Shown here one piece after another: positions 6,586-62,608 of a stretch of 64,000 bases of DNA (position 1 is its first letter; each line of letters opens with the position of its first letter). Under the pieces are notes generated by a model. The model searched no databases. It was not told where the DNA came from and saw only the letters and a list, made by a program, of their open reading frames with translations. The stretch is from Setoptus koraiensis (taxonomy: Eukaryota > Animalia > Arthropoda). Made by a program: the position numbers and the translations under genes. Location: NCBI GenBank assembly GCA_048013815.1, contig CM106586.1:15004001-15068000 (forward strand), given 5' to 3'.

Positions 6586-7437
6586 TCAGATAATATTCAA
6601 ATGTTTTTCAAAAGCAGTTGCCACTTTGACACAAATGTGCGTCGGAGTGAGCGGATACTGACTAATACAACAGACTTTGATATCCTTGTCCGATTTAGAT
6701 TTAGTTTCTTTGATCAAGACTACCTTGTCAGATTTGGAGGAATCAATTGAATTAATATTCAAATTTATGGGAGTTGAATCGATAAAAATGACAACAGGAA
6801 GATGTCTTTCCACAGGGATGTTGTCTGGGTCAATTGTGGTAGCCAGGTCATCGTTATCTGACGATTTGAGCTTACTTGAACCTTTAACAATTTCGGACAA
6901 CTCGCCCATGGGTGTTTCTTCGTCATAATTGATTACCCTAAACTTGACACTATCAGGGTGGAGTTGCTTGTCAATCGGACCTTCTAGTATCCTCATCAAA
7001 TTTATGGGACCGTCTTTTGTTGTCACTTGCGGTAGTGTGCCGGCAACAAGAAAGCTCGCCATCAAATGAGAGAACCGCTTATATGTTCTGGGCATTCTAG
7101 TTTCTCTGTGTATTTGAATCACTTGGCCGTCATGAGTTCTTACGTAGACTTGCAAGAGTTCGGCGTGATTTAATGGGGAATCAAACAACATCAATAGGCA
7201 CTGATGCACCAGGTCAGGTCTGAAATTGTGTTTAATAGTTAGATACTCATCGTATTTTCCTTTGAATTTCGATCTTTGCACTGAACTGTTCGGTGCAATA
7301 TGTTCTTCAGTTAGCAGCTCGTATTTGTCCTCTGTTTTCTCGATCCTATGAGCGACAAGATGTGCATCGTCTATGACAGCAATCAGGCGTTTTGAAGTAT
7401 CCCTGGCGTTCTTGCTGAGCTTCTTGGCTTTGATCAT
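6586..7437 (-). CDS. EMG1: EMG1/NEP1 18S rRNA pseudouridine methyltransferase homolog with divergent C-terminal half
   Basis: RPDLVHQCLLMLFDSPLN, QVYVRT, RMPRTYKRFSHLM and ISQYPLTPTHICVKVATAFE match the Nep1 family; the GAFAHG loop is not recognisable. Confidence 0.9.
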   Translation of the reverse strand: MIKAKKLSKNARDTSKRLIAVIDDAHLVAHRIEKTEDKYELLTEEHIAPNSSVQRSKFKGKYDEYLTIKHNFRPDLVHQCLLMLFDSPLNHAELLQVYVRTHDGQVIQIHRETRMPRTYKRFSHLMASFLVAGTLPQVTTKDGPINLMRILEGPIDKQLHPDSVKFRVINYDEETPMGELSEIVKGSSKLKSSDNDDLATTIDPDNIPVERHLPVVIFIDSTPINLNINSIDSSKSDKVVLIKETKSKSDKDIKVCCISQYPLTPTHICVKVATAFEKHLNII

Positions 7438-7881
7438 TCTATTGACTGGTTTGGGTTCCTAGCTTAGAAGACTCCACAACACATGAGTAGAATTTCTATG
7501 GAGATGAACAGATGATAATAACTTTGAAGATAATAACAAATGAACAAATATTTCGACTTTCGTAAGTAAGCCTTACCAAAGATGATAACCACGTGTCATG
7601 CAATTTTCATTACAGAGAATGCATAATGAACGCATGAGTTAGTGCGCCACTCGCATGTCGAGCGCACATGTGATTCTACGTAAAACTAAAATAAATGCAA
7701 AAAAAAAAAAACGAAAACATTAAATGCAAAATATATATTTATTGGCCATATCTCATCTTTATCTGGTCCGTATTTACAAAATACAATCTGATGGAATGGT
7801 CCTCTTTAAAATAGTATTAGTTGTTGGTATTTAAGAATAATATATACAATTGTGGATCAATTATAATAAGAATAAGAGAGG
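7438..7881. promoter_or_regulatory. Bidirectional promoter between EMG1 and MRPL14
   Basis: 444 bp between head-to-head ATGs; contains a 34-bp interrupted palindrome (7642-7675) conserved exactly at 41178-41211. Confidence 0.7.
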
Positions 7882-8265
7882 ATGTTTATTACACAAACGA
7901 GGTCACAAATATTTAAATTGACTAGATTGAGAGTTGTCGACAACAGTGCCATTGGGAAGGAGGCCGCATTAGCATCTAAACCGGTCAAGTGCATTCAGAT
8001 TTATAACAAAAATGAATCGAGACATGGTGGTGTAGGAGACAAAGTGCTAGTCACCATTTTAGGACAGATGAAAAAGGGCTATGTTGTTGGATGTGTGGCA
8101 AAACAGCGCACCTTTGTTCCGAGATATGATACGAACAATGTTGTCTTGGTGGACAACAACGATGTGCCTCTAGGCACAAGGATCACCTATCCGATTCCGA
8201 ATTGTCTTAGGAAAAGAGGGCCCGAAGTGGCCAGGCTCATGGCCGTTTGTACTAAGTTTGTATAA
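7882..8265 (+). CDS. MRPL14: Mitochondrial ribosomal protein uL14m
   Basis: TRLRVVDNSAIG, GVGDKVLVTILGQMKKGYVVG and DTNNVVLVDNNDVPLGTRI are uL14 motifs; single exon, 127 aa. Confidence 0.95.
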   Translation: MFITQTRSQIFKLTRLRVVDNSAIGKEAALASKPVKCIQIYNKNESRHGGVGDKVLVTILGQMKKGYVVGCVAKQRTFVPRYDTNNVVLVDNNDVPLGTRITYPIPNCLRKRGPEVARLMAVCTKFV

Positions 8266-15004: not shown

Positions 15005-15874
15005 AAAGTGGATATCTACATCTTTATCTATTGCGATAACTATATACATCTGGTCGGATATCTGGCCCAAAAGCTTGTTATCTAGTCCGGTTTGAAGAAT
15101 AAATAAAGAGCAAATAAAAAGCGTTCACACGCCAATCATTCTGGCGATAGTCCTATTTTTTTTTTTTGCATGAGACCCCTCCAGAATGGTCCCTCGCCAG
15201 TCAATGGAAACACAATAAATAGTAGTGTCACTCCTAACATTTTCACTGTCAACCTGAAATATCTAGACACAATAATCGCGTCCCTGTTGACATGAACATA
15301 TTCACTCTTTGTTACTGACCGCGTACACCAGTGGTGAGTGGGTCACTAACTAAGAAAAATGTACCTACAGAGAAGGTGATATTCAATAGTGCCTGATTGG
15401 CAAACGAAAAACTAAATAGATGAGCTGCTCATGATTGAAATGATGTGGAGGCCATCTTTTTCATGGCTAGCTCTAATATTATCTCTTTGCTCCCCATATG
15501 CCATCAGAATCGATGCATGGTCTGGCAGCGAATCAACCAACATCGGCAGGCACCGACAAACCAAGTCAGATCTTAATTTATGCCCTATCGATAGTTTTCT
15601 GTCCTTAATTCTTGTGTTGTGTGTGAATGCACCCAGTTGATGAAGTATAATCTACGTCTATGAGCTCATACTTGTCGAATGTCTTCTCGACGCTGTGAGT
15701 AAATTATTTGTTTCTATCGGCCGTTTCGATGTATCTTCGGTCAGTCAATTCCACCTTTCCCACAGCAACTCCGTAGCTCTGATCATTTTGCTGCCTGGTT
15801 TGAATTTTTAGTATAGAAAACACCACTACAGACGAGTGGAATTTCAACGGATACGAGCAAATCCTGATAAACAT
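15005..15874 (+). repeat. Segmental duplicate of 40200-41057
   Basis: High colinear identity with small indels, from aaagtg(g/a)atatctacatc to aataaacat/gataaacat. Confidence 0.95.
15045..15786 (-). pseudogene. EMG1/NEP1 pseudogene (relic 2, copy of the 40 kb relic)
   Basis: Same decayed NEP1 sequence as 40240-40969, with frameshifts and stops. Confidence 0.75.
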
Positions 15875-16068
15875 TTGTTCGTATGTAAATCTATAAACAA
15901 CTTGTTTTTTTTTGGTTTGGTTTGTTGCTTGGTTGTTTTTTTTAATCTTTATTTAAACAGATTGTGGGAAACACCCTCAGAATATAAATTCTATACAATC
16001 TTCCGGGCAATTAATTATATTGAGTCCATGCCCGGATCATGGGCTCCCCATGCCTGAAACATGGGCTC

Positions 16069-17065: not shown

Positions 17066-17070
17066 AAAAA

Positions 17071-17101
<31 letters not shown>

Positions 17102-17218
17102 TATCACTGTCACTATTATTATTACAATAAAAATTGGAGCGAGATCGCCCGGCCTCTCTTCGTTAGCCAGAACGAAAGGTTATTTTCATGTTGTTTGATC
17201 GGTTTGTTGGTTGGTTGG

Positions 17219-17787
17219 GCGTCATTACTGTTGAATAAGAGAGGTTGTGCACCCACGAAAAGGATACATATGCATGGTTTTTCACTTTACACAAACGGCA
17301 TGAAGATGTCGAAATCTAAAGGAAATGTGATCGATCCAATCAAATTATTCGAGGCCTATGGAGTTGATCCAGTGAGATTATGGACCGCTCGTAACGCAGG
17401 TGATCATACCGATGTGCTTATAGATGAGAAGACTCTGAAGAATACGTCTGAATTAGTTATAACCAAGATTCGTAATACACTTAGATATATAATTGGATCA
17501 CTGAAAGATTTTCAACCTGAAGTTAATACGATCGACTTTAAGGATTTGGCAACTTTTGACCTTTATTTCTTAAATAGGATCTGCCGATATGCAACTTCTG
17601 TCAACAATGATTACAAATATCATAGATTTGGCAGCGCGGCAGACAGCAATGTACAATTTATAAAGAACGAAGTATCTCGAGTCTACATTGAAGCGATCAA
17701 GGACATTCTATACTGTGATAACTTGAACTCTCATCGACGTCGCTCATGCCAGACGGTTTTATATATTCTATACAATGCCATTATTCG
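17219..17787 (+). pseudogene. IARS2 internal fragment (KMSKS region), copy of 43282-43856
   Basis: Near-identical nucleotides to the IARS2 gene; lacks HIGH motif and both termini; ends at a tattcgggcca x2 microduplication. Confidence 0.9.
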
Positions 17788-17845
17788 GGCCATATTCGGG
17801 CCAGCTTAATGTTTACACGAAAACCATTCATGCTATATCTTGTCA

Positions 17846-32710: not shown

Positions 32711-33054
32711 GTTTAATCTCAAGCGATAGAAAATTGCCAATTAACCGAGACTGCCAGGTCGGAGAGCTGTAAATATGCAAAATTTGCAGTTGAATTGTGA
32801 TTTCTGATTTCACGCTCTCCATTAATATGGCGTTATATAAGAAATCTGCACTATGGTCTATGGTATTTTGGATTGTGTCACACAATTTGTGTGTCAAATG
32901 TCAATGCACAAGCTACGTGTTCCTCTCTCTCTCTCTCTCCCAGAGAGCAGTACACAGATTCAAAATAGTTGGCGCGATCTAACAAATATCAAACAAATGG
33001 GACATCCGTGATACAACTATTCGGGCATCGATTTGATATCGTGAAGTGGGAGAA

Positions 33055-35151: not shown

Positions 35152-36979
35152 TCACAGTTTCAACCCTTTGATGGCAACGACACTCCCATAATAACCGAGT
35201 AGCCCCTTAGGCCGCGGCGAGTCCCATCTGCATTTAGATGTGTATTTTTTGAGTATAGCGAATGATGAAAGTAGAGTATCTTTGATCGCGCGTACAGAGA
35301 GGGTAACTATGCACTCACATTCGAGTTACTTACCTGTCTTCCACTGGATCGTATGATTCCACCATATCCGACCAATATTCCTCAGGATCGTCAGGATCCC
35401 ACTCTTGAGACCTCCCACCAACGGCACAAATTTTGTCGCCCACCACAACTAGGCTGATATATCTTCTTGACCGGCTCAAGGGTGCTATAGGTTCCCATTT
35501 ATCCTCTTGCGGGTCGTACCTCTCGCCAGAGCTTAGTCGATCAGTTCCATCGTCTCCTCCGACAACGTATATGTGCCCTTTGAAGGTTGTGCATCCGAAT
35601 GAGTTTCTTTTAGTTCTCATCGGAGAGACTTTTTCCCATCCGACGCCTTCTTTAAAACGTTCAACCGAAGATAAAATTAGGCGTCCGGACTTTCCTCCAA
35701 TAACATAAACATTGTCGGCTAAGCTTGCAACACCGCAACTATGCCTAGGTATGAGTGGGCCGGGACACTCAATCCACTCATCGGTTTGAGGACAGAACAA
35801 CTCAGACGGAACGGCTGGAACTTTTCCGCTCGACGTTGGTGCAGACGAACCTCCTACGATAAAAGGGCAGCCTCTCACAGTTGTTAGGCCTAGACCGCGC
35901 CTGACAAATTTCGGGGATGGTATCGATGTAAACATATTGCAATGGTAATTATAACAAACGACTCGATTGGTAGTTTCATATCCTCCGGTAGCTTGTGAGA
36001 TTCCTGGAGTACGGCCGACAAAATAGATGGCATTGTTCCACGCTGTTAGGGCGAACTTCTCGTACGGGATGGTTGGCATATCTGTGCTTATCCATTTAAC
36101 TTCAATAGGATCATATCTCCGGGTGGGTCGACCTTCCCCGAAATAATAGATGTATGTCGGCAGGCAATCTCGTGCGTGGAATAGACGACCATTCTTGGTA
36201 GTGTCAATATCAGAGGTATCGTAGGGGAAAAAGCACAATCTTTTTATCTTAGTCATGTAGTTCTTGCATTCTTCTCGCGATTGAATCATTGGATCGTCGT
36301 TGGCTTTCATGAAGTTATTTAAACTCATCTGAGGCCATCTAATTCGTTCAAGAAGCTCCAAAAAATTCTCCTCCCTGTTATTGTGACAAGCCCACAGCTT
36401 TGAGGCCTCGAAGAGCTCGTATTCTGAATTAAGGAACAGGTTTTCGCTTTGCGCAACGTCCAGAATTTGCTCCAGTGATAGTTTCACAATTTGTTCGTTT
36501 CCCAATTTGGCGAAGTTCTTGAAAATAAAATCTTTGGACACCCGGACAAACTCTTCGAGGCTGAACTTGGCGGCAATGTTGAGAAAATCTATGCAATTGA
36601 AAATGTTTATATTCTCTGCCAGATGGCTACCACATTTTTGCTCTAAGGAGCATATCTGCATAAATGAGGCAGTGTCTAATAGAGACAAAACATTTTCGTT
36701 GTTTATGTCTATTTTCCTCGTGTACAGGTAATCTATCACTGATTTGACATTCGAAAACTCTAGGTGCTCAATCTCGACACGAGATTCTCTCGATTCTTTG
36801 CAGTCCATTGTTATCATAGCCTTGAAGTAAGGGGACGAGGCAGCAAGTACGGGCTTGTGAGCTGTGATTTCTTGGCCACGGACATTCACTGAAAAATCAC
36901 CTGGGATATTTTCGGTTCTCAATGTGTTCATTGCCAACATGGTATCTCTGAAATATTCTAGATCTCCATTATCTGCCAT
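35152..36979 (-). CDS. BTB-BACK-Kelch protein paralog 2 (exons 36979-35334, 35227-35152)
   Basis: Same domain order and last-intron position as paralog 1; intact frame. Confidence 0.92.
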
Positions 36980-39543: not shown

Positions 39544-40239
39544 CTATTTGTCATGTCATGCGATTCTGGAACGGTCTCTGACAAAAGGAATCGGACAATT
39601 GGCAGTTTTTACTTGCAGGCATTCTTCAAATCGGATCAGATAGTAAGTTTTTGGACCAGATTTCAAAATTGAAGCCTCCGTTTTGTTACTGATTTTCGCC
39701 AGTATTCGAAATTACAGGCGTCTCCGTCGCATTGTTAATATAAAATTTTGATACGAAAATTGTCGATTCGCATAAAATTGTTGCATGGTATATAGATAGA
39801 TATTTCATTCGTCTCGTTATAGGAAACGAGTCGAATGTGGGGTACTAATGTGGAAACGAACGAGCCTCATGCGAATCATTGACGTTCTTGTCATCTCTCA
39901 ACGATAATTATCAGCTTCTCTCAATAGATATAATTCAACTAGTTATATACAACTTGGCGAGATGAGTGCAGCAAAATCATAAATTACTATTGATCGACTT
40001 TTTCCAATTTCAAATACGTCATATACATGTGTAGTGCATTGAAACCTCGTGATCTTCTGGAAGACCTACGCCTACAGTCCTCTGAATGCAAATTGAGCAC
40101 TGATATATCTTCTGATTACTGTACTGTCTAATAGCGCAGTACAAACCCTAACTGGGTCATCTCTTCGGAATTTGTATTCATCTGCTGTTATCGCGCAATA
40201 AAGTGAATATCTACATCTTTATCTATTGCGATAACTATA

Positions 40240-40969
40240 TACATCTGGTCGGATATCTGGCCCAAAAGCTTGTTATCTAATCTATTTTGAAGAATAAATA
40301 AAGAGCAAATAAAAAGCGTTCACACGCCAATCATTCTGGCAATTGTCCGATTTTTTTTGTATAAGACCCCCCCCCCCCCGGAATGGTCCCTCTCCAGTCA
40401 ATGGAAACACAATAAATAGTAGTGTCACTCCTAACATTTTCAGTGTCAACCTAGACACAATAATCGCGTCCCTGTTGACATGAACATATTCACTCTTTGT
40501 TACTGACCGCGTACACAATTGGTGAGTGGGTCACTAACTAAGAAAAATGTACCTACCGAGAAGGCGATATTCAATAGTGCCTGAATGGCAAACGAAAAAC
40601 TAAATAGATGAGCTGCTCATGATTGAAATGATGTGGAGGCCATCTCTTTCATGGCTAGCTCTAATATTATCTCTTTGCTCCCCATATGCCATCAGAATCG
40701 ATGCATGGTCTGACAGCGAATCAACCAACATCGGCAGGCACCGACAAACCAAGTCAGATCTTAATGCATGCCCTATCGATAGTTTTCTGTCCTTGATTCT
40801 TGTGCTCTGAGTGAATGCACCCAGTTGATGAAGTATAATCTACGTCTATGAGCTCATACTTGTCGAATGTCTTCTCGACGCTGTGAGTATTTGTTTCTAT
40901 CGGCCGTTTCGATGTATCTTCGGTCAGTCAATTCCACCTTTCTCACAGCAACTCTCTAGCTCTGATCAT
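40240..40969 (-). pseudogene. Full-length EMG1/NEP1 pseudogene (relic 4) head-to-head with IARS2
   Basis: Starts atgatcagagct (NEP1: atgatcaaagcc); DTSKRPI..VEKTFDKYELI and RSDLVCRCLPMLVDSLSDHA align with NEP1; aaatcggacaa and gctttt near the 3' end are shared; frameshifts and stops. Confidence 0.8.
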
Positions 40970-41406
40970 TCTCCTGGCTGGTTTGGATGCCTTGCATAGA
41001 AAACACCACTACAGACGAGTAGAATTTCAACGGATATAAACAAATGCTAATAAACATGAAAATGATAATAATTAAGTGAACAAATATTTTGACTTTCGTA
41101 AATAGGCCTCACCAAATATGATGACCACGTGCCAGGGAATTCCCAACACAAAGAATGAATAACGAAGGCATGAGTTTGTGCGCCACTCGCATGTCGAGCG
41201 CACATGTGATTGGACGCGAAACTAAAATAAATGCAACAAAAGCGAAAACAATCTATGCAAACGATATCTTCAATCGTCTTATCTCATCTATAATTGGTCT
41301 ATATTTACATAATTTAATCTGATGAAATGGTCTTCTATAAAACAGGATTAGTTGTTGGTATGTAAGAATAATATATACAATTTTGGACCAATTATAATAA
41401 GCGAGA
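40970..41406. promoter_or_regulatory. Duplicated EMG1-MRPL14 bidirectional promoter, now upstream of IARS2
   Basis: Colinear homology with 7438-7881 along its length, with an identical 34-bp core. Confidence 0.8.
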
Positions 41407-44400
41407 ATGTTCAATACACAAACGAGGTCACAGATATTTAAATTGACCAGATTGAGAGTTGTCGACAACAACAGTGCCATTAGGAAGGAGGCTTTATTAA
41501 CATTGAGGCCAATCAGATGTTCCAGTAAAAGTAACGCGTCTGGAACTGTTTTTATACCTAAGTCTAGTTTTCCCGTTCGCCATGACCCTCGGCTCGAGGC
41601 CGCTACACAAGACGACCCGAACTTTGCTGGCACATACCTTAACCAAGATCCAACGCGGAAGCTTTACATGATCCACGACGGTCCGCCTTATGCTAATGGA
41701 CAAATACATTTTGGTCACGCAATTAATAAGATCCTCAAAGATATAGCGGCTCGGTATGCTATGATATCTGGGCACAAAGTTGAATTTATTGCCGGCTGGG
41801 ACTGTCACGGCCTCCCGATAGAGACGCAAGTTCTAGCATCTGAAGAAAATTTATTTAATCAGCCGGCTGATGCAAGAAACAACCCCGAACAATTTCGTAT
41901 AGCTGCCAGAACTTATGCCAGATCACAGATAGACAAACAAATGAGCTCTTTCAAGCGTATAGGTTTACTTACCGACTGGAACAAACGCTATACAACAGAT
42001 GACCCGTCCTATGTTGCCAATCAAATGAGGGCATTTTTGCAATTATATAAATCTGGTCTGATCTACAAAAAATTACAACCGGTTCAATGGTCTTTAACTA
42101 ATCAAACGACGGTAGCTGACGCTGACATAGAATATAGAGAAAATCACGTCTCTATGAGTGCCTATGTTCAATTTGATATCATTGAAGCACCTTTTTTAGC
42201 ATCTCAAACAAAACCCGTCAGAGCTCTTATATGGACAACTACTCCTTGGACATTAATAGAAAATCAGGCTATCGCTTACAATAAGGATGCGAGCTACAGC
42301 ATTGTTAGTTTAAACAAACCGAATAAACAAGAAGGAGATATTTTTCTGGTATCAGAACAATCATTACAACACTTGAAGGAAGTGTTGGAACCCCTCGGCT
42401 ATGCAATACAGCATCAAGTTCAGATACCTGGAAAATCATTAAAAGGCGCTAAATATAGATCGTTGGATGGAAATAATGTGCTTCAATTCATTCGGACAGA
42501 TTTTGTTGACTGTGCCAAAGGAACAGGTCTGGTCCATCTGGCAGCGAACTACGGATACGATGATTATAACGCAATAATTAAAAATGGATTCGCTACACAA
42601 AAACCTTTAGTAAATAACACAGGACACTACACCGAAGAAGCTTGGGAGGGTTTACAAGGCAAGCACATATTAACTGATGGTACTGAGGAGATACTCAAAA
42701 TCCTGGAAGCATCTATAGTTCACAAGCTTCCTATAGAGCATAGTTATCCTTATGAGATTCGATCTGGTAAACCCATCATAACTAAAACAAGTCAACAAAT
42801 GTTCCTAGCTACTGAAACGCTTGTCCCTAAGTGCTTAAAAGTTCTTGATGATATATCATTCTACCCAGAGAATAGGAAAAAACATCTGATAAATTGTCTT
42901 ATGACACGCCCAAACTGGTGTATATCTCGACAAAGGCTCTGGGGAACACCAATACCTGTCCTTTACCACAAAGATGATGAAGATCATTCTAATATTATTA
43001 TCAGTAAAGAGCTCATTGAACATTATTGTAAATTAGTTTACAAGCTGAGATTCATTGACTATTGGTGGACGTTGCCGCAGGAACAGCTTGTGCCTCAGGA
43101 AATTCTAGACAAAAGTAAGCTGAAATATCAATCAAATGAGCTTGTTAGAGGCACAGATATATTTGACGTATGGGTTGATAGTGGCCTAAGTTGGCTAACA
43201 ACTACCTTAGATCTCAACAAGGACCAGCGCAAAGCTGACTTGTATCTTGAGGGCTATGACCAGACTAGAGGATGGTTCCAAGCATCATTATTGTTGAGTA
43301 TGGCTATGAGAGGTTGTGCACCTACGAAAAGGATACATATGCATGGTTTTTCACTGGACAAAAACGGCATGAAGATGTCGAAATCTAAAGGAAATGTGAT
43401 AGATCCAATCAAATTATTCGAGGCCTATGGAGTTGATCCAGTGAGATTATGGACCGCTCGTAATGCAGGTGATCATACCGATGTGCTTATAGATGAGAAG
43501 ACTCTGAAGAATACGTCTGAATTAGTTATAACCAAGATTCGTAATACACTTAGATATATAATTGGATCACTGAAAGATTTTCAACCTGAAGTTAATACGA
43601 TCGACTTTAAGGATTTGGCAACTTTTGACCTTTATTTCTTAAATAGGATCTGCCGATATGCAACTTCTGTCAACAATGATTACAAATATCATAGATTTGG
43701 CAGCGCGGCAGACAGCAATGTACAATTTATAAAGAACGAAGTATCTCGAGTCTACATTGAAGCGATCAAGGACATTCTATACTGTGATAACTTGAACTCT
43801 CATCGACGTCGCTCATGCCAGACGGTTTTATATATTCTATACAATGCCATTATCCGTTGTCTGTACCCCGTAACACCTCATATTGTTCATGAGGCTTGTC
43901 AACATCTGCAGCCAAATCAACCTGTAACTGAATGGCAGGATCTAGGATACAGAGCTGAATGGGATAATGATGCTTTGGACAATCAGATCGGCATGATAAT
44001 GAAATGTCGGAAGGCCGTCATGCACAACCTTGGAACTAGCTTTATTAAGTTGAAAAATCGAGATGCCATTCTGGTTCTCAAAGACAGAAAGATGTTCAAA
44101 CAATTGGAGAAAGTGTGTGAACAAGAAAACAATATATTCTCTGAACTGTTTGGGTCGTCCTCATTCATATTAGGATGTAAGGAGGATCTTAAGCCCCCGG
44201 ATGGTTATATAGCTCTGCATGAAAATATAGAGGAAAATGCCAAGGTGGATAGTGCAGAAAAGAGTGAGAATACTAAAGAACAAGTGACATCAAGCCAAAC
44301 TTCACTCTGGAGGAGAGACAGTGGCAGTAGTGTAATTATTGGAGGGAATGTTGCAAGTGATGATGATTCAGATCCTATTATATTCGAATTAGAATATGCA

Positions 44401-44532
44401 CTAACTCAAAATACAAAATGCACTAGGTGTAGGCGTCATGTGGTAACGGTGACTAATATAGAAGGCGAACACATATGCTTCAGGTGCGACGATATTATGC
44501 GAAATTATCAAGTTGGGGTGGTTACGCAATAA
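41407..44532 (+). CDS. IARS2: Mitochondrial isoleucyl-tRNA synthetase with MRPL14-derived N-terminus (chimeric, intronless)
   Basis: HDGPPYANGQIHFGH (HIGH), GWDCHGLPIE, WTTTPWT, WCISRQRLWGTPIP, KMSKS, C-terminal CxxC..CxxC; residues 1-38 align to MRPL14 1-37. Confidence 0.95.
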   Translation: MFNTQTRSQIFKLTRLRVVDNNSAIRKEALLTLRPIRCSSKSNASGTVFIPKSSFPVRHDPRLEAATQDDPNFAGTYLNQDPTRKLYMIHDGPPYANGQIHFGHAINKILKDIAARYAMISGHKVEFIAGWDCHGLPIETQVLASEENLFNQPADARNNPEQFRIAARTYARSQIDKQMSSFKRIGLLTDWNKRYTTDDPSYVANQMRAFLQLYKSGLIYKKLQPVQWSLTNQTTVADADIEYRENHVSMSAYVQFDIIEAPFLASQTKPVRALIWTTTPWTLIENQAIAYNKDASYSIVSLNKPNKQEGDIFLVSEQSLQHLKEVLEPLGYAIQHQVQIPGKSLKGAKYRSLDGNNVLQFIRTDFVDCAKGTGLVHLAANYGYDDYNAIIKNGFATQKPLVNNTGHYTEEAWEGLQGKHILTDGTEEILKILEASIVHKLPIEHSYPYEIRSGKPIITKTSQQMFLATETLVPKCLKVLDDISFYPENRKKHLINCLMTRPNWCISRQRLWGTPIPVLYHKDDEDHSNIIISKELIEHYCKLVYKLRFIDYWWTLPQEQLVPQEILDKSKLKYQSNELVRGTDIFDVWVDSGLSWLTTTLDLNKDQRKADLYLEGYDQTRGWFQASLLLSMAMRGCAPTKRIHMHGFSLDKNGMKMSKSKGNVIDPIKLFEAYGVDPVRLWTARNAGDHTDVLIDEKTLKNTSELVITKIRNTLRYIIGSLKDFQPEVNTIDFKDLATFDLYFLNRICRYATSVNNDYKYHRFGSAADSNVQFIKNEVSRVYIEAIKDILYCDNLNSHRRRSCQTVLYILYNAIIRCLYPVTPHIVHEACQHLQPNQPVTEWQDLGYRAEWDNDALDNQIGMIMKCRKAVMHNLGTSFIKLKNRDAILVLKDRKMFKQLEKVCEQENNIFSELFGSSSFILGCKEDLKPPDGYIALHENIEENAKVDSAEKSENTKEQVTSSQTSLWRRDSGSSVIIGGNVASDDDSDPIIFELEYALTQNTKCTRCRRHVVTVTNIEGEHICFRCDDIMRNYQVGVVTQ

Positions 44533-45758
44533 TGTTTTTGCAACAAAGAAGAATAGTTGCGGTGTTTGTTGATTTTTGCTACCTTACGATAATAGATTTC
44601 TATTGTTTACATTTCTATACAGTAGTAAACGAGCATGATCTTTGTTAAAATCTTCGAAATTAATTTAATAAGTTTGGAAAAGTTGGTTCCTTCATAAGCT
44701 CAAATCCAATCTGATTTCTGGTGTTTCATGTTTTCTTAGCCTCACCGAAGATTGCAATACATAACTCCTATAATTACTTAGTCCCATCTGCAGCTAGAAT
44801 TACCGTTGCTAACTAGAATTTTCATTCGTACTCACCTCAAGAGTGTTCTAGAACTAAATTATTGCAGATGTCTATAACTAGCCTATAAATCTCTCGGTGT
44901 TACATCATCTAATTCGTTATACCATGACGCAAAAATCATTAGTTCTGATTCATTACAACAGAGAGATAAGCAGTAAACAATAATTTCGCCGAGCTATCAT
45001 AAAGTTGAGTCACGCATATTAAACAACCTGGAAAGTTCCAGCCTGAATGAGCACTGTTCACTATGATTGGATTTGCTTTTGAATAGTAAACAAATGGTTT
45101 ATTAAACAAAAACGACACTAAATAATCAATGAATTATTTAGCTTAAATCCAAATTCAAGGTGGATATGATTACACTCTCGCTGAGTCAGTGATGGCTTGA
45201 ACGGGATTTTCATCTGATATGCTCCTAAACTGTAACACTTTGTGCTCCATAATCTATAAGGAATTTCGGGCATTGAAAGTTCACGAAAGTAACAAGATTA
45301 TTCCCCAACTCGCTTCCTGGCTATCATTCCTACTTTGTCTCTGTTTGCTGAGAGGGAAAACTCAACCAACACAATAGACGCGTTACGTAATTCCTTTTAT
45401 AAATATATTTGACTGACTGTTGTAATGATCAGTTGTGAACTCGTCACCAAAAAGGTAAGCTGAACATCGGTTGCCCTAAAAACTAATCGACTGTCGGTAA
45501 CTATTTTTAGTACTTTAGAGACATGTGTGTCTTGTTTTCATGAGACACTCGTTAATATAAAGCAACTGTTTCCTATCTACCTGATCTTCTTACCCAAAGC
45601 ATAATATTTGGATTCAATGTCGATAAAGAAGAAGCACTCAACTACTAGAGCTAATTCATTCACACAGGCGAAATACAAACATTGATTATACAAGAAGTCA
45701 AAGCCAAGCAATTAATTTACCATCATTCCTGGCGATTATTTAGACGAAACGCCACAGA

Positions 45759-47523
45759 ATGGCCAACTATACTCAACTTGGTATTATAATCCTTCTGGCC
45801 ACAGGTAAATCTCACAGATAGCGCTCTCTTCGTGTCTAGGCTACAAGTGAGATGAGAAGCATTCAATCTTCAATAATGAACGATTGTCGGGAATAGCAAT
45901 CATAATTAATCAAATCTTTCTTTCAGGTTTCGTTATCAATGCTCAACCCAGCTTTTTTGATGTTAATGTGGCTGAAATGAATGGCATTCGCATGGTATCA
46001 ACAAGTGACAACAATTACGCTATCACTGACCCTAACTTCTCCCTAAACTGGCGCACGTAAGTTACTTGAGGTTACATGATCTGTTATATTTTGTTATAAT
46101 GTCTATGACTCGCGACTTATCTCACCCCATTCTTTGCCCACGATAGTGTGTCAGTTAATGGCGATGACGTTATAATCGCAACCAGAGACAATAATATCCT
46201 AACGAAGAAACTTTCAACGATGAGCGAAATAGAGCGAAATGAGCTGTCCAAGAGCAAAAATCAAGTAGCACAAGTAATACAGTACAATGGCATGTTCAAT
46301 GATGGTAGCGGCAGTTACAGTAGCTCAATAAACATAAACAACGGAAACATTGGTAATCAACATGCTAAATACACAACTTATACTAGTTCCGGTAGCCATA
46401 TGTCTTCATCGTCATCATCATCATCATCGCTCGGCGGAAATAATCAAATGAGTTACACGCTGAACGATATTTCATTTTCCATGAGTGGCGACAATGATTT
46501 TGCCATCCTCAAGAAAGACAAGATGCCGTTCAATTGGTCAAGGTAGGTGATCCCACCAAGTAGAAAATTCAATCGTTCATCCTGATATCTTGTCAAATCA
46601 CCTAAACTTGGTTATCGTTTCCTTCTACTGTTATTGCATCCAGAGTTTTTGTTAATGGCGACTTGCTGACAATAGTTTTGAGTAACGGTCAAGTCTATAT
46701 GAAACCCATGGCTGTAGCAAGTCAGGAGGAGATAAAGCAGTTGGATATCCTGCGAAACGAACTCAAGGCGGTTGCTCAAGTGCAACAGCAACAATTTAGC
46801 CAAACAATGCAAAACTCGATGAACATGATGCAAAACATTATGGGTAATACATTTCAACCAAACTATCAGGCATATACGAATGCAGCCCATTTACCATACC
46901 AAACGAATCCCTTTGTCCCAATGAATTCTATGAATTCTTTCAACTCGATGAATCCCCTGAACACCCTCAATCCAATGAATTCTATTAACCAACAACAGTT
47001 GCAGGAACAATATAATCAACAGTTGTTGTATCGACAGCTCTTACAGCAGCAAATTCTTCAGCAACTAAATCAACAATATCTACCGACAATATATCAGCAC
47101 CCGGTCAACAATCAATTAGCCCCCAATGTCCCAACCAATCAATCACCGAATAACATGATAAATAATAATAATATGAGCAATAACCCTTTACCATCAGCCC
47201 AGTATCTTCCATACTCTAGTCCCGCTCCCCGCCCGAACTATCCCGACTATAGACAATCCCAGATACAACCAGATAGAAATTTTCAGCCATCACAACAATA
47301 TTATAACGGGAATGTACCAACTAATTCTTTGCATCAATCGCCCAATCAAAATCACTCAGGTAACTTGTTGGGTCAATTCAATCCTGCGATACCAGCATCA
47401 ACAGGCGGAGGCTTCTCAGGTGGAATGTTCGGCAACACGTTTCCATTCGGACCGGTAAATAGTCCATTCGGTAATGGCTTTCCCTTCAATGGCGCCTCTG
47501 CAGTCGCGATGGCTGGTCGTTGA
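45759..47523 (+). CDS. Secreted protein with an internally duplicated domain and Q/N/P- and FG-rich tail (exons 45759-45804, 45927-46056, 46147-46542, 46644-47523)
   Basis: Signal peptide MANYTQLGIIILLATGFVINA; GT-AG introns in phases 1,2,2 give one open frame; repeats NWRTVSVNGDDVIIATRDNNILTKKL and NWSRVFVNGDLLTIVLSNGQVYMKPM. Confidence 0.8.
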
Positions 47524-47889: not shown

Positions 47890-48300
47890 ATCTCAATTAA
47901 AAGTCAAAGTTGATTCAGAAATGGTATTGTTAAAAGTACAAAAACGATTTAAGTTTTTTCAAAACCTCAAATCTTACACATTTTATGATTTTGGGTCTCA
48001 GGCAGCTGCAGCTCGGCATGAAAAATATGAAGTTCCGAAAAAACAAGTGACAGTAAGCTAACCTTCATTTGGATAAGAGACAAGGGCAGTAGTGTAACCG
48101 TGGAGGCACTGTTGCAAATGAAGATAGTTCAGATCCTATTGTATTCGAATTGCGCATCAAACAAAGAAGACTAAAAGTGATGTCTGTTGATTTTTGCGTA
48201 TGTACGATAGCAGAAATTCTATTGTTTACATTTCTACACAGTAATAAACGAGCGTGGCATATGTGAAAATCTTTGGAATTTATTTGATCAGTTGCTAAAA
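47890..48300 (+). pseudogene. Decayed copy of the IARS2 3' end and 3' flank
   Basis: aacaagtgaca, ggcagtagtgtaa, ttcagatcctatt.tattcgaatt, ttctattgtttacatttcta match 44040-44680, with internal deletions. Confidence 0.75.
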
Positions 48301-48310
48301 GTTATATCCG

Positions 48311-49286
48311 TCATCTATCATTCTGGCCAGTTCTATTGAAATTGAATACAGTGTCTTTTACAACCTGAGCCATCAGGCCTGTTATGGGTTCAATGGTCGC
48401 GCGAGCACAATCTTCCGTCACCTTGGTGAGATTTTCATCTTGTAGTCTTTTCTCGTGTTGGTCTATGCTCATCCATCGTGGTATATAACCGCGTCCGAGT
48501 CTGCCCTCAGCGACTTCAAGGCGTTCAGCGAGATCAGACAGTTGTCTGGTGGTATATTCTGGATTCGTGGATAAACTCGAGCTGCTGAGTGTATTGAACC
48601 AATATTTGTTTCCCAGACACTCAAGAAGGTAATTGTCTAATGACGATTTAAAATAAGAGATCTCCAGAGAGTAATATTTTTTACAGTGCACGCCAAAATC
48701 TTCAATTTTGTTCATGGGTATAGTCTGATATTCTGGCGTTAAATCGTCGGCCGGTTTGAAATTTTTCGGGTAGCATCGGAAAGCACCTATATCAACCTTT
48801 CCAAATGAAATTGTTCTAATAGGATCTATCACGATTGCAACAAAAGGATCTTGGAATTGCTGATTGAGACTTTGTGTGCCGACATCTATACCAGAAAGCC
48901 AGCATCCGTAGCCTGGATGTGAATGATACCAACCTATGACATTTTCTTTTCTATCGACATGCTTGGCCTGTTCAACATAAGCCGCCATATACTCGTAGGC
49001 GGCGGCGTGAGCATTTACCCGTGTTTCTGTACCTTCGACAGGCAAGGCAAATGAGTCCATAACTATCATGGTATTAGTATCGACTTTACCTAATAACATT
49101 CCCATAATCTCTAGAGATCCGCCAGATTTTGCGTGTCTAAGCATCTTCAATAGAGCGTGTGCCGAAATTTTAATAAATTTGAAATAACTGGGGTCCCTTT
49201 CCCATGGCTTTGCTATCCTAATCTCTGATTGTTGTTTTTCGTCATAAATATATATGTCATCAATGGCTGCGGCCTCGCTCAGTATA
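48311..49286 (-). CDS. COPS5: COP9 signalosome subunit 5, missing its first ~18 codons in this copy
   Basis: [32 protein letters not shown] and JAMM motif [17 protein letters not shown]; homology stops abruptly at 49286. Confidence 0.95.
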
Positions 49287-52200
49287 GCACAAAGCAGACA
49301 ACATAACATCCCACAAACCCAAACCTCCCATCTCTGATCTTTAAGTAAGAAAAACAGACAAATCAGCAAACATCAGCGACAGCACATCGCTTTCATGGAA
49401 CGAAGAATTCTACATAAAATTAGAGCCATGCAAACTCAAACTACTATCCAAGATAGTTATAAACTACACAAACCTCCATACATCCAGACAACCAAACAAA
49501 ACATCTACTAACAACCAACCACACAATGCCGCACTACAATCCACACTGGCTCAAACCAACGTTAAAAGCATCAAGGACACAACCACATGACTAATAAACA
49601 TATATAAAAAATACACCATGTTGCTAGAGGCAAAACACGATAACATTATAAATTCCACACTCCTAGACTATACACAAACTACACGACTAGTTCCAGAATA
49701 ATTCAAAAAAATAAAAGCAAGACATAAAAACCCGAAACAAACCCTACCAAACAACAAAACATAGCAAATCAAAATAAAACATAAACGACATCCAACTAAC
49801 ATGCTTACAAAAAAATTATCACAACAAAAAATAACTAAAAAAACGTAAAACAACCCACACCAGCCAAAAAAAATCATCACAAAAACCCCACGACACTCAG
49901 AACCAGAACAACGACAATTACTCACAAAGCCAAAACAATCCGATTTATCCAACGGTGCAAGCCAAGAACAAACCAAAACTAACTACCTATACACTACAGC
50001 AACACTCAAAGGTACCAAAACAAGACCCACGACACAAAAAGCAGATACCAAATCCGTAGCTTAATACTCCACAATATAGTTCAACCGTAACATACACAAC
50101 ACCAACATACCAACTTGCTACCTCGTCACAGTCCCAGAACAACAGCCGGTAACAGCCACACAAACACAGCAAACACAAGACTATCGAACACCACACTAAC
50201 TCGGACATGATTCAAACAAAAAAACCCGAAATACAGCCAACCCATAACAACTACACACAAAAAAGCGAGCATCAAGCGCGACGACGACCCAACAAATATC
50301 ACAATACCGAAGTTACCCAAACACCAGACAACAATCCCATAAACATACGATCTAAACAATGAACAAAACCGTTGCTAACAATAACCCAATTCCCAACAAC
50401 AGACCATAGATGCAAATACAGACAGCATACCAAAAAGCAAAAAAAAAATAAAACACGGGAAAAACCAGGCACAACACCACTAAAAAGAGTCCGTGCAATA
50501 AGCACTGCACAAATACCAGTCACACTCGAAACAACAACACACGAAATAACCTCACCAAATTTACAGCGAAAACAAAGAAGTCCACTCCATCAACCCCATC
50601 GAATAAGGTTAACGTAAGATAACCTACTACAGAATTCCCAATAACCTCTCAAACACAACCACAAAGTCCGACGACGCAAGAACGCAAATACAGAAACCAC
50701 ATGAACTAGCGAGCCCGCGTACACAACCTCTATCAGCGACAACCACACCAACAATATCGGCTCACTGAGAACATCACGTAAGCTTAACCCAAACTACAGG
50801 ACACAATATAGACGTATATTTCAGACAAAAAAGAACTTTACTCCAAAAACCAGAAAACACCCCCCCAACGATAAATACAATCAAAAGAACAAAAGAGCCG
50901 ATGTCCCTGGACAACACGGTCCCACATGCCCTCTATAACAAAAACAAACGAAAAAGACGCAACATCAACAATCGACATCGTAGCCTCTAGAAGGAGAAAG
51001 CCGCATCCCGCCGAATGAAGTCACGTAACGTAGTGTAAAAATAACAACAAGGCAACAAAAAGAACACTACCACCAAAATCTACGTACCTAGACGCGGAAC
51101 ATAACAACATACCACATTCAGCACATTAAGACGCACAAATTACTAACTAGTCCAAATCAGACATCCAAAAACCACTCACCAGAATAAAAAAAGAACATCA
51201 ATAAACGGCACCCAAAACAACAGGACCAAACCACCAACTGTCTACCAAATAAAATAACTTACCACCTGCTTAAATTTACAGCTCTTAGGGAGCATTCGAA
51301 GCAGAAAAGACAACAACATTACCCAAAAAAATTATTAATCTAACAGGCGCACTCAACAAACACCATAACGATAGTCCCAACAAACAGCAATACTACGAAA
51401 AGAGATATTCAACTACGATCAACAGAAGTCACCACATCCACGCCATATACCACATACGCACCCACAAACCTAAGTCAACTACTTCAAACAAAAATAACAA
51501 ACCACACTAAAAACAACACCGACGAATAAACACAGCTGAGCCGAGCACAAAAAAAGGTACAAAATACAGTACCCCAGACACTTATCATATAAACCCTAGC
51601 CCAGCAACACAACTAAAACAACAAACTATAATCACAACAGTAGACCCCACTACGAGCCAAACAAATCGACGCGTCACCCACCATCTGAGCACAACACAAC
51701 ACATTCCATCATCCCTGCGGCGGTTACGACACAAATTAATGCACCCATCCACTTACATCCATCCCGCACGCCACACAATTCAACCATCAAGTCAACGAAC
51801 ATACTATACAAAACAACAAACACGCACAATCAATCAAAACTTACACAATACAAAATAAAGTCCAAAAATCAAGAAGACAAAAGACCCAAAACCGCGCATC
51901 GCACAAACACTATCACATACAAACGCAATAACACCAAACCATTAAACAACCCAACAACCAACAACAAACACTAGGGAAACAACACCCTACGTTCCACCAA
52001 CAACCACACATACACCAAATTGCCCCACAACTTGAATCCAAGAAACAGACAATCAAAGGGTGCAAACGTAGAAATGGCAAACCCCTGGTATAGAATCACC
52101 GAGAAAAATCACATACACCATGCAAGCGAAATAACACAAAATAAAAACACAAACATCAACGTACATCCACAAGACGAACAAAGTACACAACGCCAACAGC

Positions 52201-62168: not shown

Positions 62169-62608
62169 CAGCATCCGTAGCCTGGATGTGAATGATACCA
62201 ACCTATGACATTTTCTTTTCTATCGACATGCTTGGCCTGTTCAACATAAGCCGCCATATACTCGTAGGCGGCGGCGTGAGCATTTACCCGTGTTTCTGTA
62301 CCTTCGACAGGCAAGGCAAATGAGTCCATAACTATCATGGTATTAGTATCGACTTTACCTAATAACATTCCCATAATCTCTAGAGATCCGCCAGATTTTG
62401 CGTGTCTAAGCATCTTCAATAGAGCGTGTGCCGAAATTTTAATAAATTTGAAATAACTGGGGTCCCTTTCCCATGGCTTTGCTATCCTAATCTCTGATTG
62501 TTGTTTTTCGTCATAAATATATATGTCATCAATGGCTGCGGCCTCGCTCAGTATACTGCTGCAACCCTCTTTGGGGTCTATATCCATCAAGTCTTGCTTT
62601 GATGTCAT
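62169..62608 (-). CDS. COPS5: COPS5 5' portion with the true start ([18 protein letters not shown]), cut by the gap
   Basis: 62169-62555 matches 48900-49286 at a constant 13269-bp offset; joining the copies gives a 342-aa CSN5. Confidence 0.93.

What the first reader, a model, noticed from the sequence alone, without database searches (positions are those of the whole stretch)
40240..41520. Chimeric gene: mitochondrial IleRS took its promoter and N-terminal peptide from a duplicated MRPL14
Seen: 40240-41520 is a colinear copy of 6586-7990 (NEP1, bidirectional promoter, MRPL14 5' end). IARS2 begins MFNTQTRSQIFKLTRLRVVDNNSAIRKEALLTLRPIRC-SS versus MRPL14 MFITQTRSQIFKLTRLRVVDN-SAIGKEAALASKPVKC (29 of 37 aligned residues identical), fused in frame to a complete IleRS. 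Known: RVVDNS is a core uL14 motif, so the donor is MRPL14, and IARS2 needs an N-terminal presequence. NEP1 in the copy is wrecked while the promoter core and the peptide are conserved, which indicates selection. Changes after the fusion (G to R; acid-free LLTLRPIR; R-C-S-S at the junction) look like tuning toward a cleavable presequence. Inference: a ribosomal protein's structural N-terminus was exapted as a targeting signal for an essential synthetase. Presequence recruitment is known for organelle-to-nucleus transfers in plants, but I do not know a case replacing the leader of an animal nuclear gene.
Basis: partly seen in the sequence, partly recalled or inferred. Interest (0 to 1): 0.9.

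Follow-up and report, generated by a model that had tools for sequence, protein, structure and literature searches.

The report
Mitochondrial IleRS with borrowed MRPL14 leader
In a tiny plant-feeding (eriophyoid-type) mite, the essential mitochondrial isoleucyl-tRNA synthetase gene has swapped its own upstream region, start codon and N-terminal leader for a copy of the front end of the nearby mitochondrial ribosomal protein L14 gene, and a related species keeps the same fusion.

Summary
The fusion is real at the DNA level. A ~0.85-kb copy (40669-41520) of the donor segment (7128-7992) holds a decayed EMG1/NEP1 5' end, the intergenic promoter region and MRPL14 codons 1-38. It runs in frame into a complete 1041-aa mitochondrial-type IleRS.

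A related species (IleRS 86% identical) has the same fusion, junction, extra codon and EMG1 relic. Six other eriophyoid species instead keep IARS2 head-to-head with Prefoldin and carry unrelated leaders.

The leader looks translated and constrained: dN/dS is 0.23, and its 3' half differs at 10% of bases against 33% in flanking non-coding DNA.

- The promoter and first ~19 codons group by species, not by gene (32:0 sites). Gene conversion with MRPL14 therefore explains much of the paralog similarity.
- Eriophyoid uL14m has almost no separate presequence, so the donor piece probably already carried import information.

Another eriophyoid clade carries the first 22 residues of cytosolic RPS15A on IARS2.

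No RNA data were reachable, so expression, cleavage and import are inferred. Unchecked notes from this scan report similar 5'-end captures elsewhere in this genome.

The parts
40669..40969 (-). Decayed relic of the first ~100 codons of EMG1/NEP1 (left part of the copied segment)
   Evidence: tblastn of the window's EMG1: residues 1-54 and 63-103 at 34-46% identity, E 2e-7 to 2e-8. An equivalent relic lies in the relative at L001 ~9295-9587, E 4e-5.
40970..41406 (.). Copy of the EMG1-MRPL14 intergenic (bidirectional promoter / 5'UTR) region. Conserved blocks include CACGTG at 41127-41132 and the near-identical block 41166-41211.
   Evidence: 79-89% identical to 7438-7881. Short motif blocks are invariant in all four copies from the two species. 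Promoter activity itself is inferred.
41407..41520 (+). Leader codons 1-38, copied from MRPL14 codons 1-37 plus one inserted codon
   Evidence: tblastn E 2e-13. Between-species dN/dS 0.23. AlphaFold2 pLDDT below 50 for residues 1-40.
41521..41544 (+). Linker codons 39-46 between the MRPL14-derived part and the conserved IleRS core. Possibly the tail of the ancestral leader (inference).
   Evidence: MRPL14 homology ends at about 41520. The conserved TVF-x-P-K/R-S anchor of all eriophyoid IleRS begins at codon 47.
41545..44532 (+). Mitochondrial-type isoleucyl-tRNA synthetase body (stop codon included)
   Evidence: Pfam tRNA-synt_1 E 4e-102 and Anticodon_1. HFGH at 101, KMSKS at 656, CxxC at 1005 and 1024. 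Nearest named hits are mitochondrial IleRS of mites and other arthropods. dN/dS 0.09 against the relative. Model mean pLDDT 87.
6586..7437 (-). Intact EMG1/NEP1 gene (donor locus)
   Evidence: 283-aa ORF, Pfam EMG1 E 1e-35.
7438..7881 (.). Donor intergenic region between EMG1 and MRPL14
   Evidence: Aligned to 40970-41406.
7882..8265 (+). Intact MRPL14 (uL14m) gene, donor of the leader
   Evidence: 127-aa ORF, Pfam Ribosomal_L14. 98% identical to the relative's and 63% to Aceria tosichella uL14m.
15005..15874 (+). Younger partial pseudo-copy of 40200-41057 (upstream flank and EMG1 relic). It lacks the promoter core and the leader.
   Evidence: 92% over 876 columns. Repeat families D7, D14 and D16 at 89-98%.
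17219..17787 (+). Younger pseudo-copy of an internal IleRS fragment (43282-43856)
   Evidence: 97% over 575. It explains the doubled depth and the loose ends at 43308 and 43853.
48314..49288 (-). CSN5/JAB gene, the conserved downstream neighbour of IARS2 in all eriophyoid loci seen
   Evidence: tblastn 99% to the relative's CSN5. Neighbour lists.

Best explanation
In the common ancestor of this mite and its sequenced relative, a segment of about 0.9 kb came to lie directly in front of IARS2. The segment held the 5' third of EMG1, the EMG1-MRPL14 intergenic promoter region, and MRPL14's start codon with its first 37 codons. It joined in frame a few codons before the conserved IleRS core. It replaced the ancestral arrangement, in which IARS2 shares a ~400-bp head-to-head intergenic region with Prefoldin and has its own leader.

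Shown: the DNA architecture, its presence in two species, the intact and constrained reading frame, and the species-wise mosaic of the promoter.

Inferred: the copied intergenic region now drives IARS2, translation starts at 41407, and the 38-46 N-terminal residues act as the mitochondrial import leader.

The donor peptide was probably import-competent already. It then became more presequence-like (arginines 3 to 6; an R-x-(F)-S site at the junction). The promoter and the first ~19 codons have continued to exchange sequence with the MRPL14 locus by gene conversion.
For: - Fusion and frame.
- Independent DNA support: Logan contigs of four runs cover 41182-41452 and 41427-43853. An 18.7-kb contig of a related species carries the same fusion.
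- Same event in both species: an extra codon after DN; the shared changes G->R, S->L and two K->R; the same junction; an EMG1 relic of the same extent.
- Ancestral state: AA-permease, Prefoldin(-), IARS2(+), CSN5(-) in six other eriophyoid species from four branches of the IleRS tree, all with unrelated leaders. No Prefoldin is found in the window or in L001.
- Constraint on the leader: dN/dS 0.23, Fisher p 0.006-0.03. The 3' half has 6/60 differences against 55/169 in adjacent non-coding DNA, p 6e-4.
- Constraint on the body: dN/dS 0.09. Seven of eight population variants in the unique part are synonymous.
- No other start: TAA three codons upstream; the next ATG is codon 88, inside the core.
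- Leader properties: net charge +6/+7 with 6 Arg. This lies within the range of 85 annotated mitochondrial IleRS N-termini (mean +6.8), and only 2.4% of internal 38-mers reach it.
- Structure: residues 1-40 are predicted disordered and the fold starts near residue 41-47.
- Donor N-terminus is short. Uncleaved N-terminal signals in mitoribosomal proteins are documented in PMC8724765.
- Gene conversion: promoter sites group by species 32:0; leader codons 20-38 group by gene 7:0.
Against: - There is no transcript, start-site or protein evidence. The only runs found are genomic DNA.
- The leader has two acidic residues (D20, E28) and only a moderate hydrophobic moment, 0.50-0.52.
- Conservation of codons 1-19 may owe more to conversion from the highly conserved MRPL14 than to selection on IARS2.
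- A second IARS2 elsewhere in this genome could not be excluded.
- The window's own protein is not in the protein collections searched.
Confidence: 0.7

Rival explanations
1. The copied module matters as a promoter and start codon only. The MRPL14 peptide is translated and tolerated, but import depends on signals elsewhere in IleRS, or the peptide stays on the mature enzyme as an uncleaved N-terminal tail.
For: Eriophyoid IARS2 leaders are very short and varied: 12-57 residues with net charge +1 to +5, including a 22-residue piece of cytosolic RPS15A. This suggests weak demands on the leader. Unconventional and uncleaved signals exist in matrix proteins (PMC8724765). Codons 1-19 are being homogenised by conversion rather than shaped independently.
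Against: The 3' half of the leader is not converted, yet it is conserved between species (10% against 33% divergence). Its shared derived changes all add Arg or Leu. In the relative an Arg lies 3 residues before the F-S junction, as in known MPP sites (the motif rule is from my own knowledge). Leader charge matches bona fide IARS2 N-termini.
Confidence: 0.2
2. The leader is not part of the real mRNA or protein. Transcription or translation starts elsewhere, through an unseen upstream exon or a downstream start, and the in-frame MRPL14 piece is incidental.
For: No RNA evidence was obtainable. The Aculops lycopersici genome paper reports that 5' introns are retained more often in that related mite (PMC7738191).
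Against: The frame is open and colinear in two species despite dS of about 0.3-0.7, with dN/dS 0.23. An in-frame stop lies three codons upstream. The next ATG would remove about 40 conserved core residues. About 84% of genes in the related A. lycopersici are intronless. Outgroup IARS2 genes are single ORFs with a contiguous leader.
Confidence: 0.05
3. This is a redundant or decaying IARS2 duplicate, and the working gene with an ancestral leader lies elsewhere in the genome.
For: The locus is duplication-prone. A partial pseudo-copy sits at 15005-17787, and a further MRPL14-leader-like copy lies somewhere outside the window.
Against: The 1041-aa ORF has all catalytic motifs, dN/dS 0.09 against the relative, mostly synonymous polymorphism, and retains the ancestral CSN5 neighbour. 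The relative has the same chimera, and P0001 was the only hit close to the window's protein among the 120 listed.
Confidence: 0.04
4. Assembly artefact: a mis-join between MRPL14-like sequence and IARS2 across a shared repeat.
For: Unitigs break at 41427-41467, where a third copy shares 41 identical bases.
Against: The same fusion sits inside one 18.7-kb contig of a different species. In one run a single 2427-base contig runs from leader codon 8 (41427) through 43853. The leader differs from MRPL14 at 8 residues plus one codon, so it is not a collapsed copy.
Confidence: 0.01

Closest known systems
[quoted passage not shown] 1996) and exon shuffling in plant cytochrome c1 (Long et al. 1996), both as cited in PMC2031878
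   Same: A nuclear gene for a mitochondrial protein obtains its N-terminal targeting part as a copy of the 5' end of another nuclear gene for a mitochondrial protein.
   Different: The plant cases concern genes newly transferred from the organelle that had no leader. Here a long-resident, essential animal nuclear gene replaced an existing leader together with its promoter. No intron is involved. The donor peptide includes part of the donor's folded core.
Chimeric genes formed by partial gene duplication in animals (Drosophila examples such as jingwei; from my own knowledge, not checked here)
   Same: A copied 5' fragment (promoter, start codon, first codons) of one gene is fused in frame to the body of another. 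The donor is retained intact.
   Different: Those are usually new, dispensable genes built from duplicates. Here the recipient appears to be the essential housekeeping synthetase itself. The fusion is conserved in two species and is still exchanging sequence with its donor.
Unconventional or uncleaved N-terminal targeting signals of mitoribosomal proteins (PMC8724765)
   Same: Eriophyoid uL14m has only a short N-terminal extension, so targeting information presumably overlaps the structural N-terminus. That overlapping piece is what was copied.
   Different: That work describes signals within their own proteins. It does not describe their transfer to another gene.
Other 5'-end captures noted by this scan in the same genome (POLG/OPA3, PNPase/eIF3g, SCO1/mRpL22, URM1, DAD1/akirin, PPCS/LMBRD1). 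These are unchecked AI notes.
   Same: The same pattern is reported: promoter, start codon and first codons borrowed from another gene, several of them for mitochondrial proteins.
   Different: I did not verify any of them. Several are described as inverted duplications of the immediate neighbour. This case is a direct-orientation copy from a donor ~6.8 kb away in the relative and ~33.5 kb away here.

Membership tests
Mitochondrial (bacterial-type) isoleucyl-tRNA synthetase, IARS2 | Class I catalytic domain with HIGH and KMSKS motifs | tested here: met
   Pfam tRNA-synt_1 E 4e-102. HFGH at residue 101 and KMSKS at 656.
Mitochondrial (bacterial-type) isoleucyl-tRNA synthetase, IARS2 | Anticodon-binding domain and C-terminal zinc-binding CxxC pairs | tested here: met
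   Pfam Anticodon_1. CTRC at 1005 and CFRC at 1024, invariant in the 60-sequence alignment.
Mitochondrial (bacterial-type) isoleucyl-tRNA synthetase, IARS2 | Orthology to annotated mitochondrial IleRS of animals | tested here: met
   The best named hits are 'isoleucine--tRNA ligase, mitochondrial' of mites, ticks and insects at 33-41% identity. The protein falls within a clade of eriophyoid IleRS.
Mitochondrial (bacterial-type) isoleucyl-tRNA synthetase, IARS2 | Localisation in mitochondria and aminoacylation of mitochondrial tRNA-Ile | not testable with these tools
   Needs cell biology or biochemistry.
uL14m (MRPL14) as donor of the leader | Donor gene is a Ribosomal_L14 family member of the mitochondrial type | tested here: met
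   Pfam Ribosomal_L14. Hits are named uL14m / 39S L14 mitochondrial, including Aceria tosichella.
uL14m (MRPL14) as donor of the leader | Leader is homologous to donor residues 1-37 at protein and DNA level, together with the upstream DNA | tested here: met
   tblastn E 2e-13. blastn 81% over 556 columns including the intergenic region.
Chimeric gene by partial duplication | Intact donor retained; copy fused in frame to the recipient | tested here: met
Chimeric gene by partial duplication | Fusion fixed and maintained by selection (present and constrained in a second species) | tested here: met
   P0001/L001 carries the same fusion. Leader dN/dS 0.23, body 0.09.
Chimeric gene by partial duplication | Chimeric transcript and protein are made | not testable with these tools
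   All runs found hold genomic DNA and no RNA run was found.
Cleavable mitochondrial presequence | N-terminal, positively charged, Arg-rich, few acidic residues | tested here: met
   Net +6/+7, 6 Arg, 2 acidic residues. This lies inside the range of 85 annotated IARS2 N-termini, and only 2.4% of internal 38-mers reach this charge.
Cleavable mitochondrial presequence | Amphipathic helix | tested here: inconclusive
   Maximum 11-residue hydrophobic moment is 0.50-0.52, against 0.60+/-0.13 for real IARS2 N-termini and 0.53+/-0.11 for internal segments. AlphaFold2 gives no helix and pLDDT below 50.
Cleavable mitochondrial presequence | Processing-peptidase site (Arg at -2 or -3) and actual cleavage | not testable with these tools
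   R-C-S-S here and R-C-F-S in the relative sit at the junction. The motif rule is from my own knowledge. TargetP and MitoFates are not available.

The most novel reading that the evidence does not exclude
Eriophyoid mites routinely rebuild the 5' ends of essential genes (promoter, start codon, N-terminal leader) by pasting in small 5' modules of other housekeeping genes. IARS2 did this at least twice independently: once with mitochondrial uL14m (this lineage), and once with the first 22 residues of cytosolic RPS15A/uS8 (another clade of about 9 species). That would imply that mitochondrial import in these streamlined animals accepts short, unconventional N-terminal peptides, even one from a cytosolic ribosomal protein, and that donor and copy can stay linked by gene conversion.
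Probability: 0.4. Interest if true: 0.8.

Novelty: new variant of a known kind. Interest (0 to 1): 0.62.

Why it matters
Replacement of the promoter and targeting leader of a resident, essential mitochondrial gene by a copy from another gene is well described for organelle-to-nucleus transfers in plants. It is rarely documented in animals.

This case offers several things:
- The donor, the copy, the dead by-product (the EMG1 relic) and the ancestral arrangement are all visible.
- A second species dates the event to before the split of the two species.
- It gives a natural experiment on what a minimal import signal needs. The copied piece includes the first strand of the uL14 fold.
- It shows concerted evolution between a gene's promoter and its donor.
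- Together with the RPS15A-type leader in another clade, it suggests a general way in which very compact, intron-poor genomes repair or rewire gene 5' ends.

Tried and rejected
- RNA evidence. Both run searches and the single read-laying run yielded only genomic DNA contigs, with even depth over intergenic DNA. Expression could not be tested.
- Leader search against 1.84 billion representative proteins. The only hit was a GC-rich repeat protein, P0241, which is a chance match.
- ESM Atlas feature search on residues 1-46. Scores of 0.63 are below any useful level.
- Aligning the Prefoldin-IARS2 intergenic regions of uS8-type and ancestral-type species to locate the RPS15A insertion. They are too diverged to read.
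- Searching for the third MRPL14-leader-like copy in the window and in fetched loci. It was not found.
- Prefoldin in the window and in L001. It is absent.
- Scan notes on a second IleRS or on MRPL14 in this genome. There are none.
- Independent duplications in the two species. Rejected because the codon insertion, four substitutions, the junction and the extent of the EMG1 relic are all shared.
- A simple tandem duplication with breakpoints in MRPL14 and IARS2. Rejected because the gene order does not fit. An insertional copy, or a duplication followed by a deletion, remains open.
Full report
**1. What is in the sequence**

The window carries three intact genes at the donor site:
- EMG1/NEP1 at 6586-7437, minus strand.
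- A 444-bp intergenic region.
- A 127-aa Ribosomal_L14 gene at 7882-8265.

About 33.5 kb downstream, 40959-41503 aligns to 7427-7975 at 81% identity, or 78-87% per block. The aligned part ends inside a 1041-aa ORF, 41407-44532. The first 38 codons of that ORF match uL14m residues 1-37 (29 identical, one inserted codon; E 2e-13).

The rest of the ORF is a complete class I IleRS:
- Pfam tRNA-synt_1 E 4e-102 and Anticodon_1.
- HFGH at residue 101, KMSKS at 656, and two C-terminal CxxC pairs.
- Nearest named relatives are the mitochondrial IleRS of mites, ticks and insects.

A TAA lies three codons upstream of the ATG. The next in-frame ATG is codon 88, inside the core.

Left of the copied intergenic region, only about the first 100 codons of EMG1 are still recognisable, at 40669-40969 (E about 2e-8). 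40240-40669 has no detectable homology to EMG1.

**2. Organism and context**

One uL14m hit is named Aceria tosichella. About 45 unnamed 127-aa orthologues come from sequencing-run assemblies. The IleRS has 33 unnamed relatives at 47-86% identity, and acariform mites are the nearest named relatives. The genes here are single ORFs with short spacers.

This fits an eriophyoid mite. In that group about 84% of genes are intronless and the median intergenic length is 538 bp (PMC7738191). An earlier follow-up note of this scan also calls the genome an eriophyoid-type mite.

**3. The fusion is real and older than one species**

Logan contigs from four DNA runs cover 41182-41452 and 41427-43853.

An 18.7-kb contig of a related species (L001; IleRS P0001, 86% identical) has the same gene order: DUF1168, EMG1(-), MRPL14(+), peroxidase(-), about 2.3 kb of spacer, then the chimeric IARS2(+) and CSN5(-). 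L001 is colinear with the window except for a block of about 27 kb (13775 to about 40669) present only in the window.

The relative's IARS2 begins with the same uL14m-like leader. Upstream of it lies an EMG1 relic of the same extent (E 4e-5).

Both leaders share features absent from both MRPL14 genes and from 45 other eriophyoid uL14m:
- An extra codon after D-N.
- G->R at the otherwise invariant I-G.
- S->L.
- Two K->R changes.
- The same junction.

One event in the common ancestor is the parsimonious reading.

**4. What it replaced**

An IleRS tree built without the leader columns places window+P0001 as sister to 32 other eriophyoid sequences. I fetched six of those, from four branches. In all six, IARS2 lies head-to-head with Prefoldin, about 350-420 bp away. 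An amino-acid permease lies further upstream in at least five of them. CSN5 lies downstream in the three whose contigs extend far enough to show it. Their leaders are unrelated to uL14m.

Neither the window nor L001 contains Prefoldin. CSN5 is retained downstream, at 48314-49288 in the window. So the break is exactly at the 5' end of IARS2. Its old promoter partner and most of its old leader are gone.

Codons 39-46 may be the tail of the old leader (inference).

**5. Is the leader translated and constrained?**

Nei-Gojobori comparison of the two species:

| Region | dN | dS | dN/dS |
|---|---|---|---|
| Leader, codons 1-38 | 0.076 | 0.33 | 0.23 |
| IleRS body | – | 0.72 | 0.09 |
| MRPL14 | – | – | 0.024 |

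The excess of synonymous change in the leader is significant (Fisher p 0.006-0.03).

The 3' half of the leader is not affected by conversion (section 6). It differs at 6 of 60 aligned bases between species, against 55 of 169 in the adjacent non-coding region (p 6e-4).

In the unique part of the gene, seven of eight population variants seen in the DNA runs are synonymous.

These results support a translated, selected N-terminus and a working gene. They do not replace RNA or protein evidence, which I could not obtain.

**6.

I aligned the two paralogous 5' regions from both species and counted parsimony-informative sites:
- In the non-coding part, sites group the paralogs by species 32 times, by gene 0 times, and crosswise 3 times.
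- In leader codons 20-38 they group by gene 7:0.

Identities agree with this. The window's MRPL14 and IARS2 upstream regions are 79-89% identical, while either orthologous pair is only 46-74% identical.

So the promoter and roughly the first 19 codons were homogenised with the MRPL14 locus after the species split. The tract ends near the inserted codon.

What does point to function in the promoter is the set of short blocks invariant in all four copies. These include CACGTG at 41127-41132 and the block ending in CACATGTGATT around 41166-41211. Their activity is inferred.

**7. Does the peptide look like an import leader?**

- The first 38 residues have net charge +6 (window) and +7 (relative), six arginines and two acidic residues.
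- For comparison, 85 annotated mitochondrial IleRS N-termini average +6.8 +/- 1.6 with 1.1 acidic residues.
- Internal 38-mers of the same proteins average +0.5, and only 2.4% reach +6.
- The donor's N-terminus already has +5 but only three arginines.
- The hydrophobic moment is unremarkable.
- AlphaFold2 on a 60-sequence alignment (mean pLDDT 87) gives pLDDT below 50 and no secondary structure for residues 1-40. The fold starts near residue 41-47. The leader is thus a free extension, not part of the enzyme.
- At the junction the relative reads R-C-F-S and the window R-C-S-S. An Arg at -3 or -2 is the usual context for the processing peptidase (my own knowledge). Cleavage is untested.

**8. 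Nuance on 'exaptation'**

Eriophyoid uL14m has only 17 residues before the V-D-N-S motif, against 31-58 in other arthropods. Its separate presequence has almost disappeared, so targeting information must overlap the structural N-terminus. That situation is documented for mitoribosomal proteins in yeast (PMC8724765).

The copied piece was therefore probably a working, if unconventional, import signal from the start. The event is better described as one matrix protein borrowing another's N-terminal signal, followed by changes toward a more canonical one.

A caveat from the same paper concerns yeast Mrpl38, which I believe is uL14m. [quoted passage not shown]

**9. A parallel case in the same gene family**

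About nine IleRS sequences form one clade (SH-aLRT 99). They begin with a 22-residue peptide whose best matches in the PDB sequence set are the first 22 residues of cytosolic ribosomal protein S15a/uS8 (E 4.7e-5; 36 of the 38 hits listed are uS8 N-termini).

The ATG is preceded by in-frame stops, and Prefoldin is still the upstream neighbour. One member of the clade (P0010) keeps an ancestral-type leader.

IARS2 in eriophyoids has therefore taken an N-terminus from a ribosomal protein gene at least twice. I could not obtain the RPS15A loci of those species.

Unchecked notes from this scan list further 5'-end captures in this genome, several on mitochondrial proteins. They are leads, not evidence.

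**10. Mechanism of origin**

The locus is prone to small segmental copies:
- A younger pseudo-copy joins 15005-15874 (matching 40200-41057) and 17219-17787 (matching 43282-43856) around a low-complexity array.
- CSN5 has a partial second copy at 62171-62608.
- All DNA runs show one more leader-like copy outside the window. It is identical to the IARS2 copy over 41427-41467 and then diverges.

The present gene order does not fit a single tandem duplication with breakpoints in MRPL14 and IARS2. An insertional copy of about 0.9 kb, or a larger duplication followed by a deletion, both remain possible.

**11. Verdict**

The chimeric-gene interpretation is well supported at the DNA and evolutionary level, but not yet at the RNA or protein level. 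The 'selection' and 'exaptation' arguments need the corrections above.

The case is a new variant of a known kind: presequence and promoter acquisition by duplication, and chimeric gene formation. It is unusual in affecting a resident essential animal gene, in its continuing conversion with the donor, and in having a parallel in a sister clade.

Noticed in passing
L002:10001-10066; L005:5366-5428 (and proteins P0002, P0005, P0009, P0011, P0017, P0027, P0028, P0031): In another eriophyoid clade the mitochondrial IleRS begins with about 22 residues that match the N-terminus of cytosolic ribosomal protein S15a/uS8 (PDB phmmer E 4.7e-5). Prefoldin is still head-to-head upstream. This looks like a second, independent capture of a ribosomal-protein N-terminus by IARS2.
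   Followed up: partly
window 41427-41467 (loose end after 41467 in runs X1-X4): All four DNA runs contain a further copy identical to the IARS2 leader over these 41 bases. It then continues differently, reading R-V-V-D-I-S-A-F-G-K-G. It is not in the window or in the fetched loci. It may be a third gene with this leader or a dead copy.
   Followed up: partly
window 15005-17809: A younger partial pseudo-copy of the IARS2 locus: the upstream flank plus EMG1 relic, and an internal IleRS fragment with a 204-aa ORF. The two pieces are joined by a tandem array of 8-9-base units at 16036-16528 and by Q/T/N/P-rich low-complexity sequence.
   Followed up: partly
window 13775-40669: A block of about 27 kb is absent from the related species' contig between the peroxidase-side spacer and the EMG1 relic. 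It holds two paralogous 530-550-aa genes (31148-32740 and 35330-36979, minus strand), several recent internal duplications (27.2-29.7 kb, 30.4-34.2 kb, 33.0-38.6 kb) and an assembly gap of Ns near 28.2-28.75 kb.
   Followed up: partly
window 50000-60000: About 10 kb that is strongly A+C-rich on the + strand (GC skew about -0.46, AT skew about +0.54). No tandem repeat was found and there is no ORF of 200 aa or more. Unexplained.
   Followed up: no
window 48900-49199 and 62169-62468; 62171-62608: A partial second copy of CSN5/JAB (first 146 residues, 99% identical to the relative's protein), with a 300-base stretch 100% identical to the main copy.
   Followed up: no
window 44275-44695 and 48038-48314: The 3' end of IARS2 and the sequence just downstream are repeated at 77-81% identity right next to CSN5. 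This suggests that the 3.8 kb now separating IARS2 from CSN5 (with Q-rich ORFs at 46148-47523) was inserted by a duplication. In the relative the two genes are 150 bp apart.
   Followed up: no
L008:6979-10384; L009:4919-8324: In another eriophyoid species MRPL14 is head-to-head with an XRN-type exonuclease gene rather than EMG1. The donor's own neighbourhood therefore also varies within the group.
   Followed up: no
proteins P0121-P0163: Eriophyoid uL14m is uniformly 127 aa with only about 17 residues before the V-D-N-S motif. Other arthropods have 31-58. The mitochondrial presequence of this protein has been almost eliminated in the group.
   Followed up: partly
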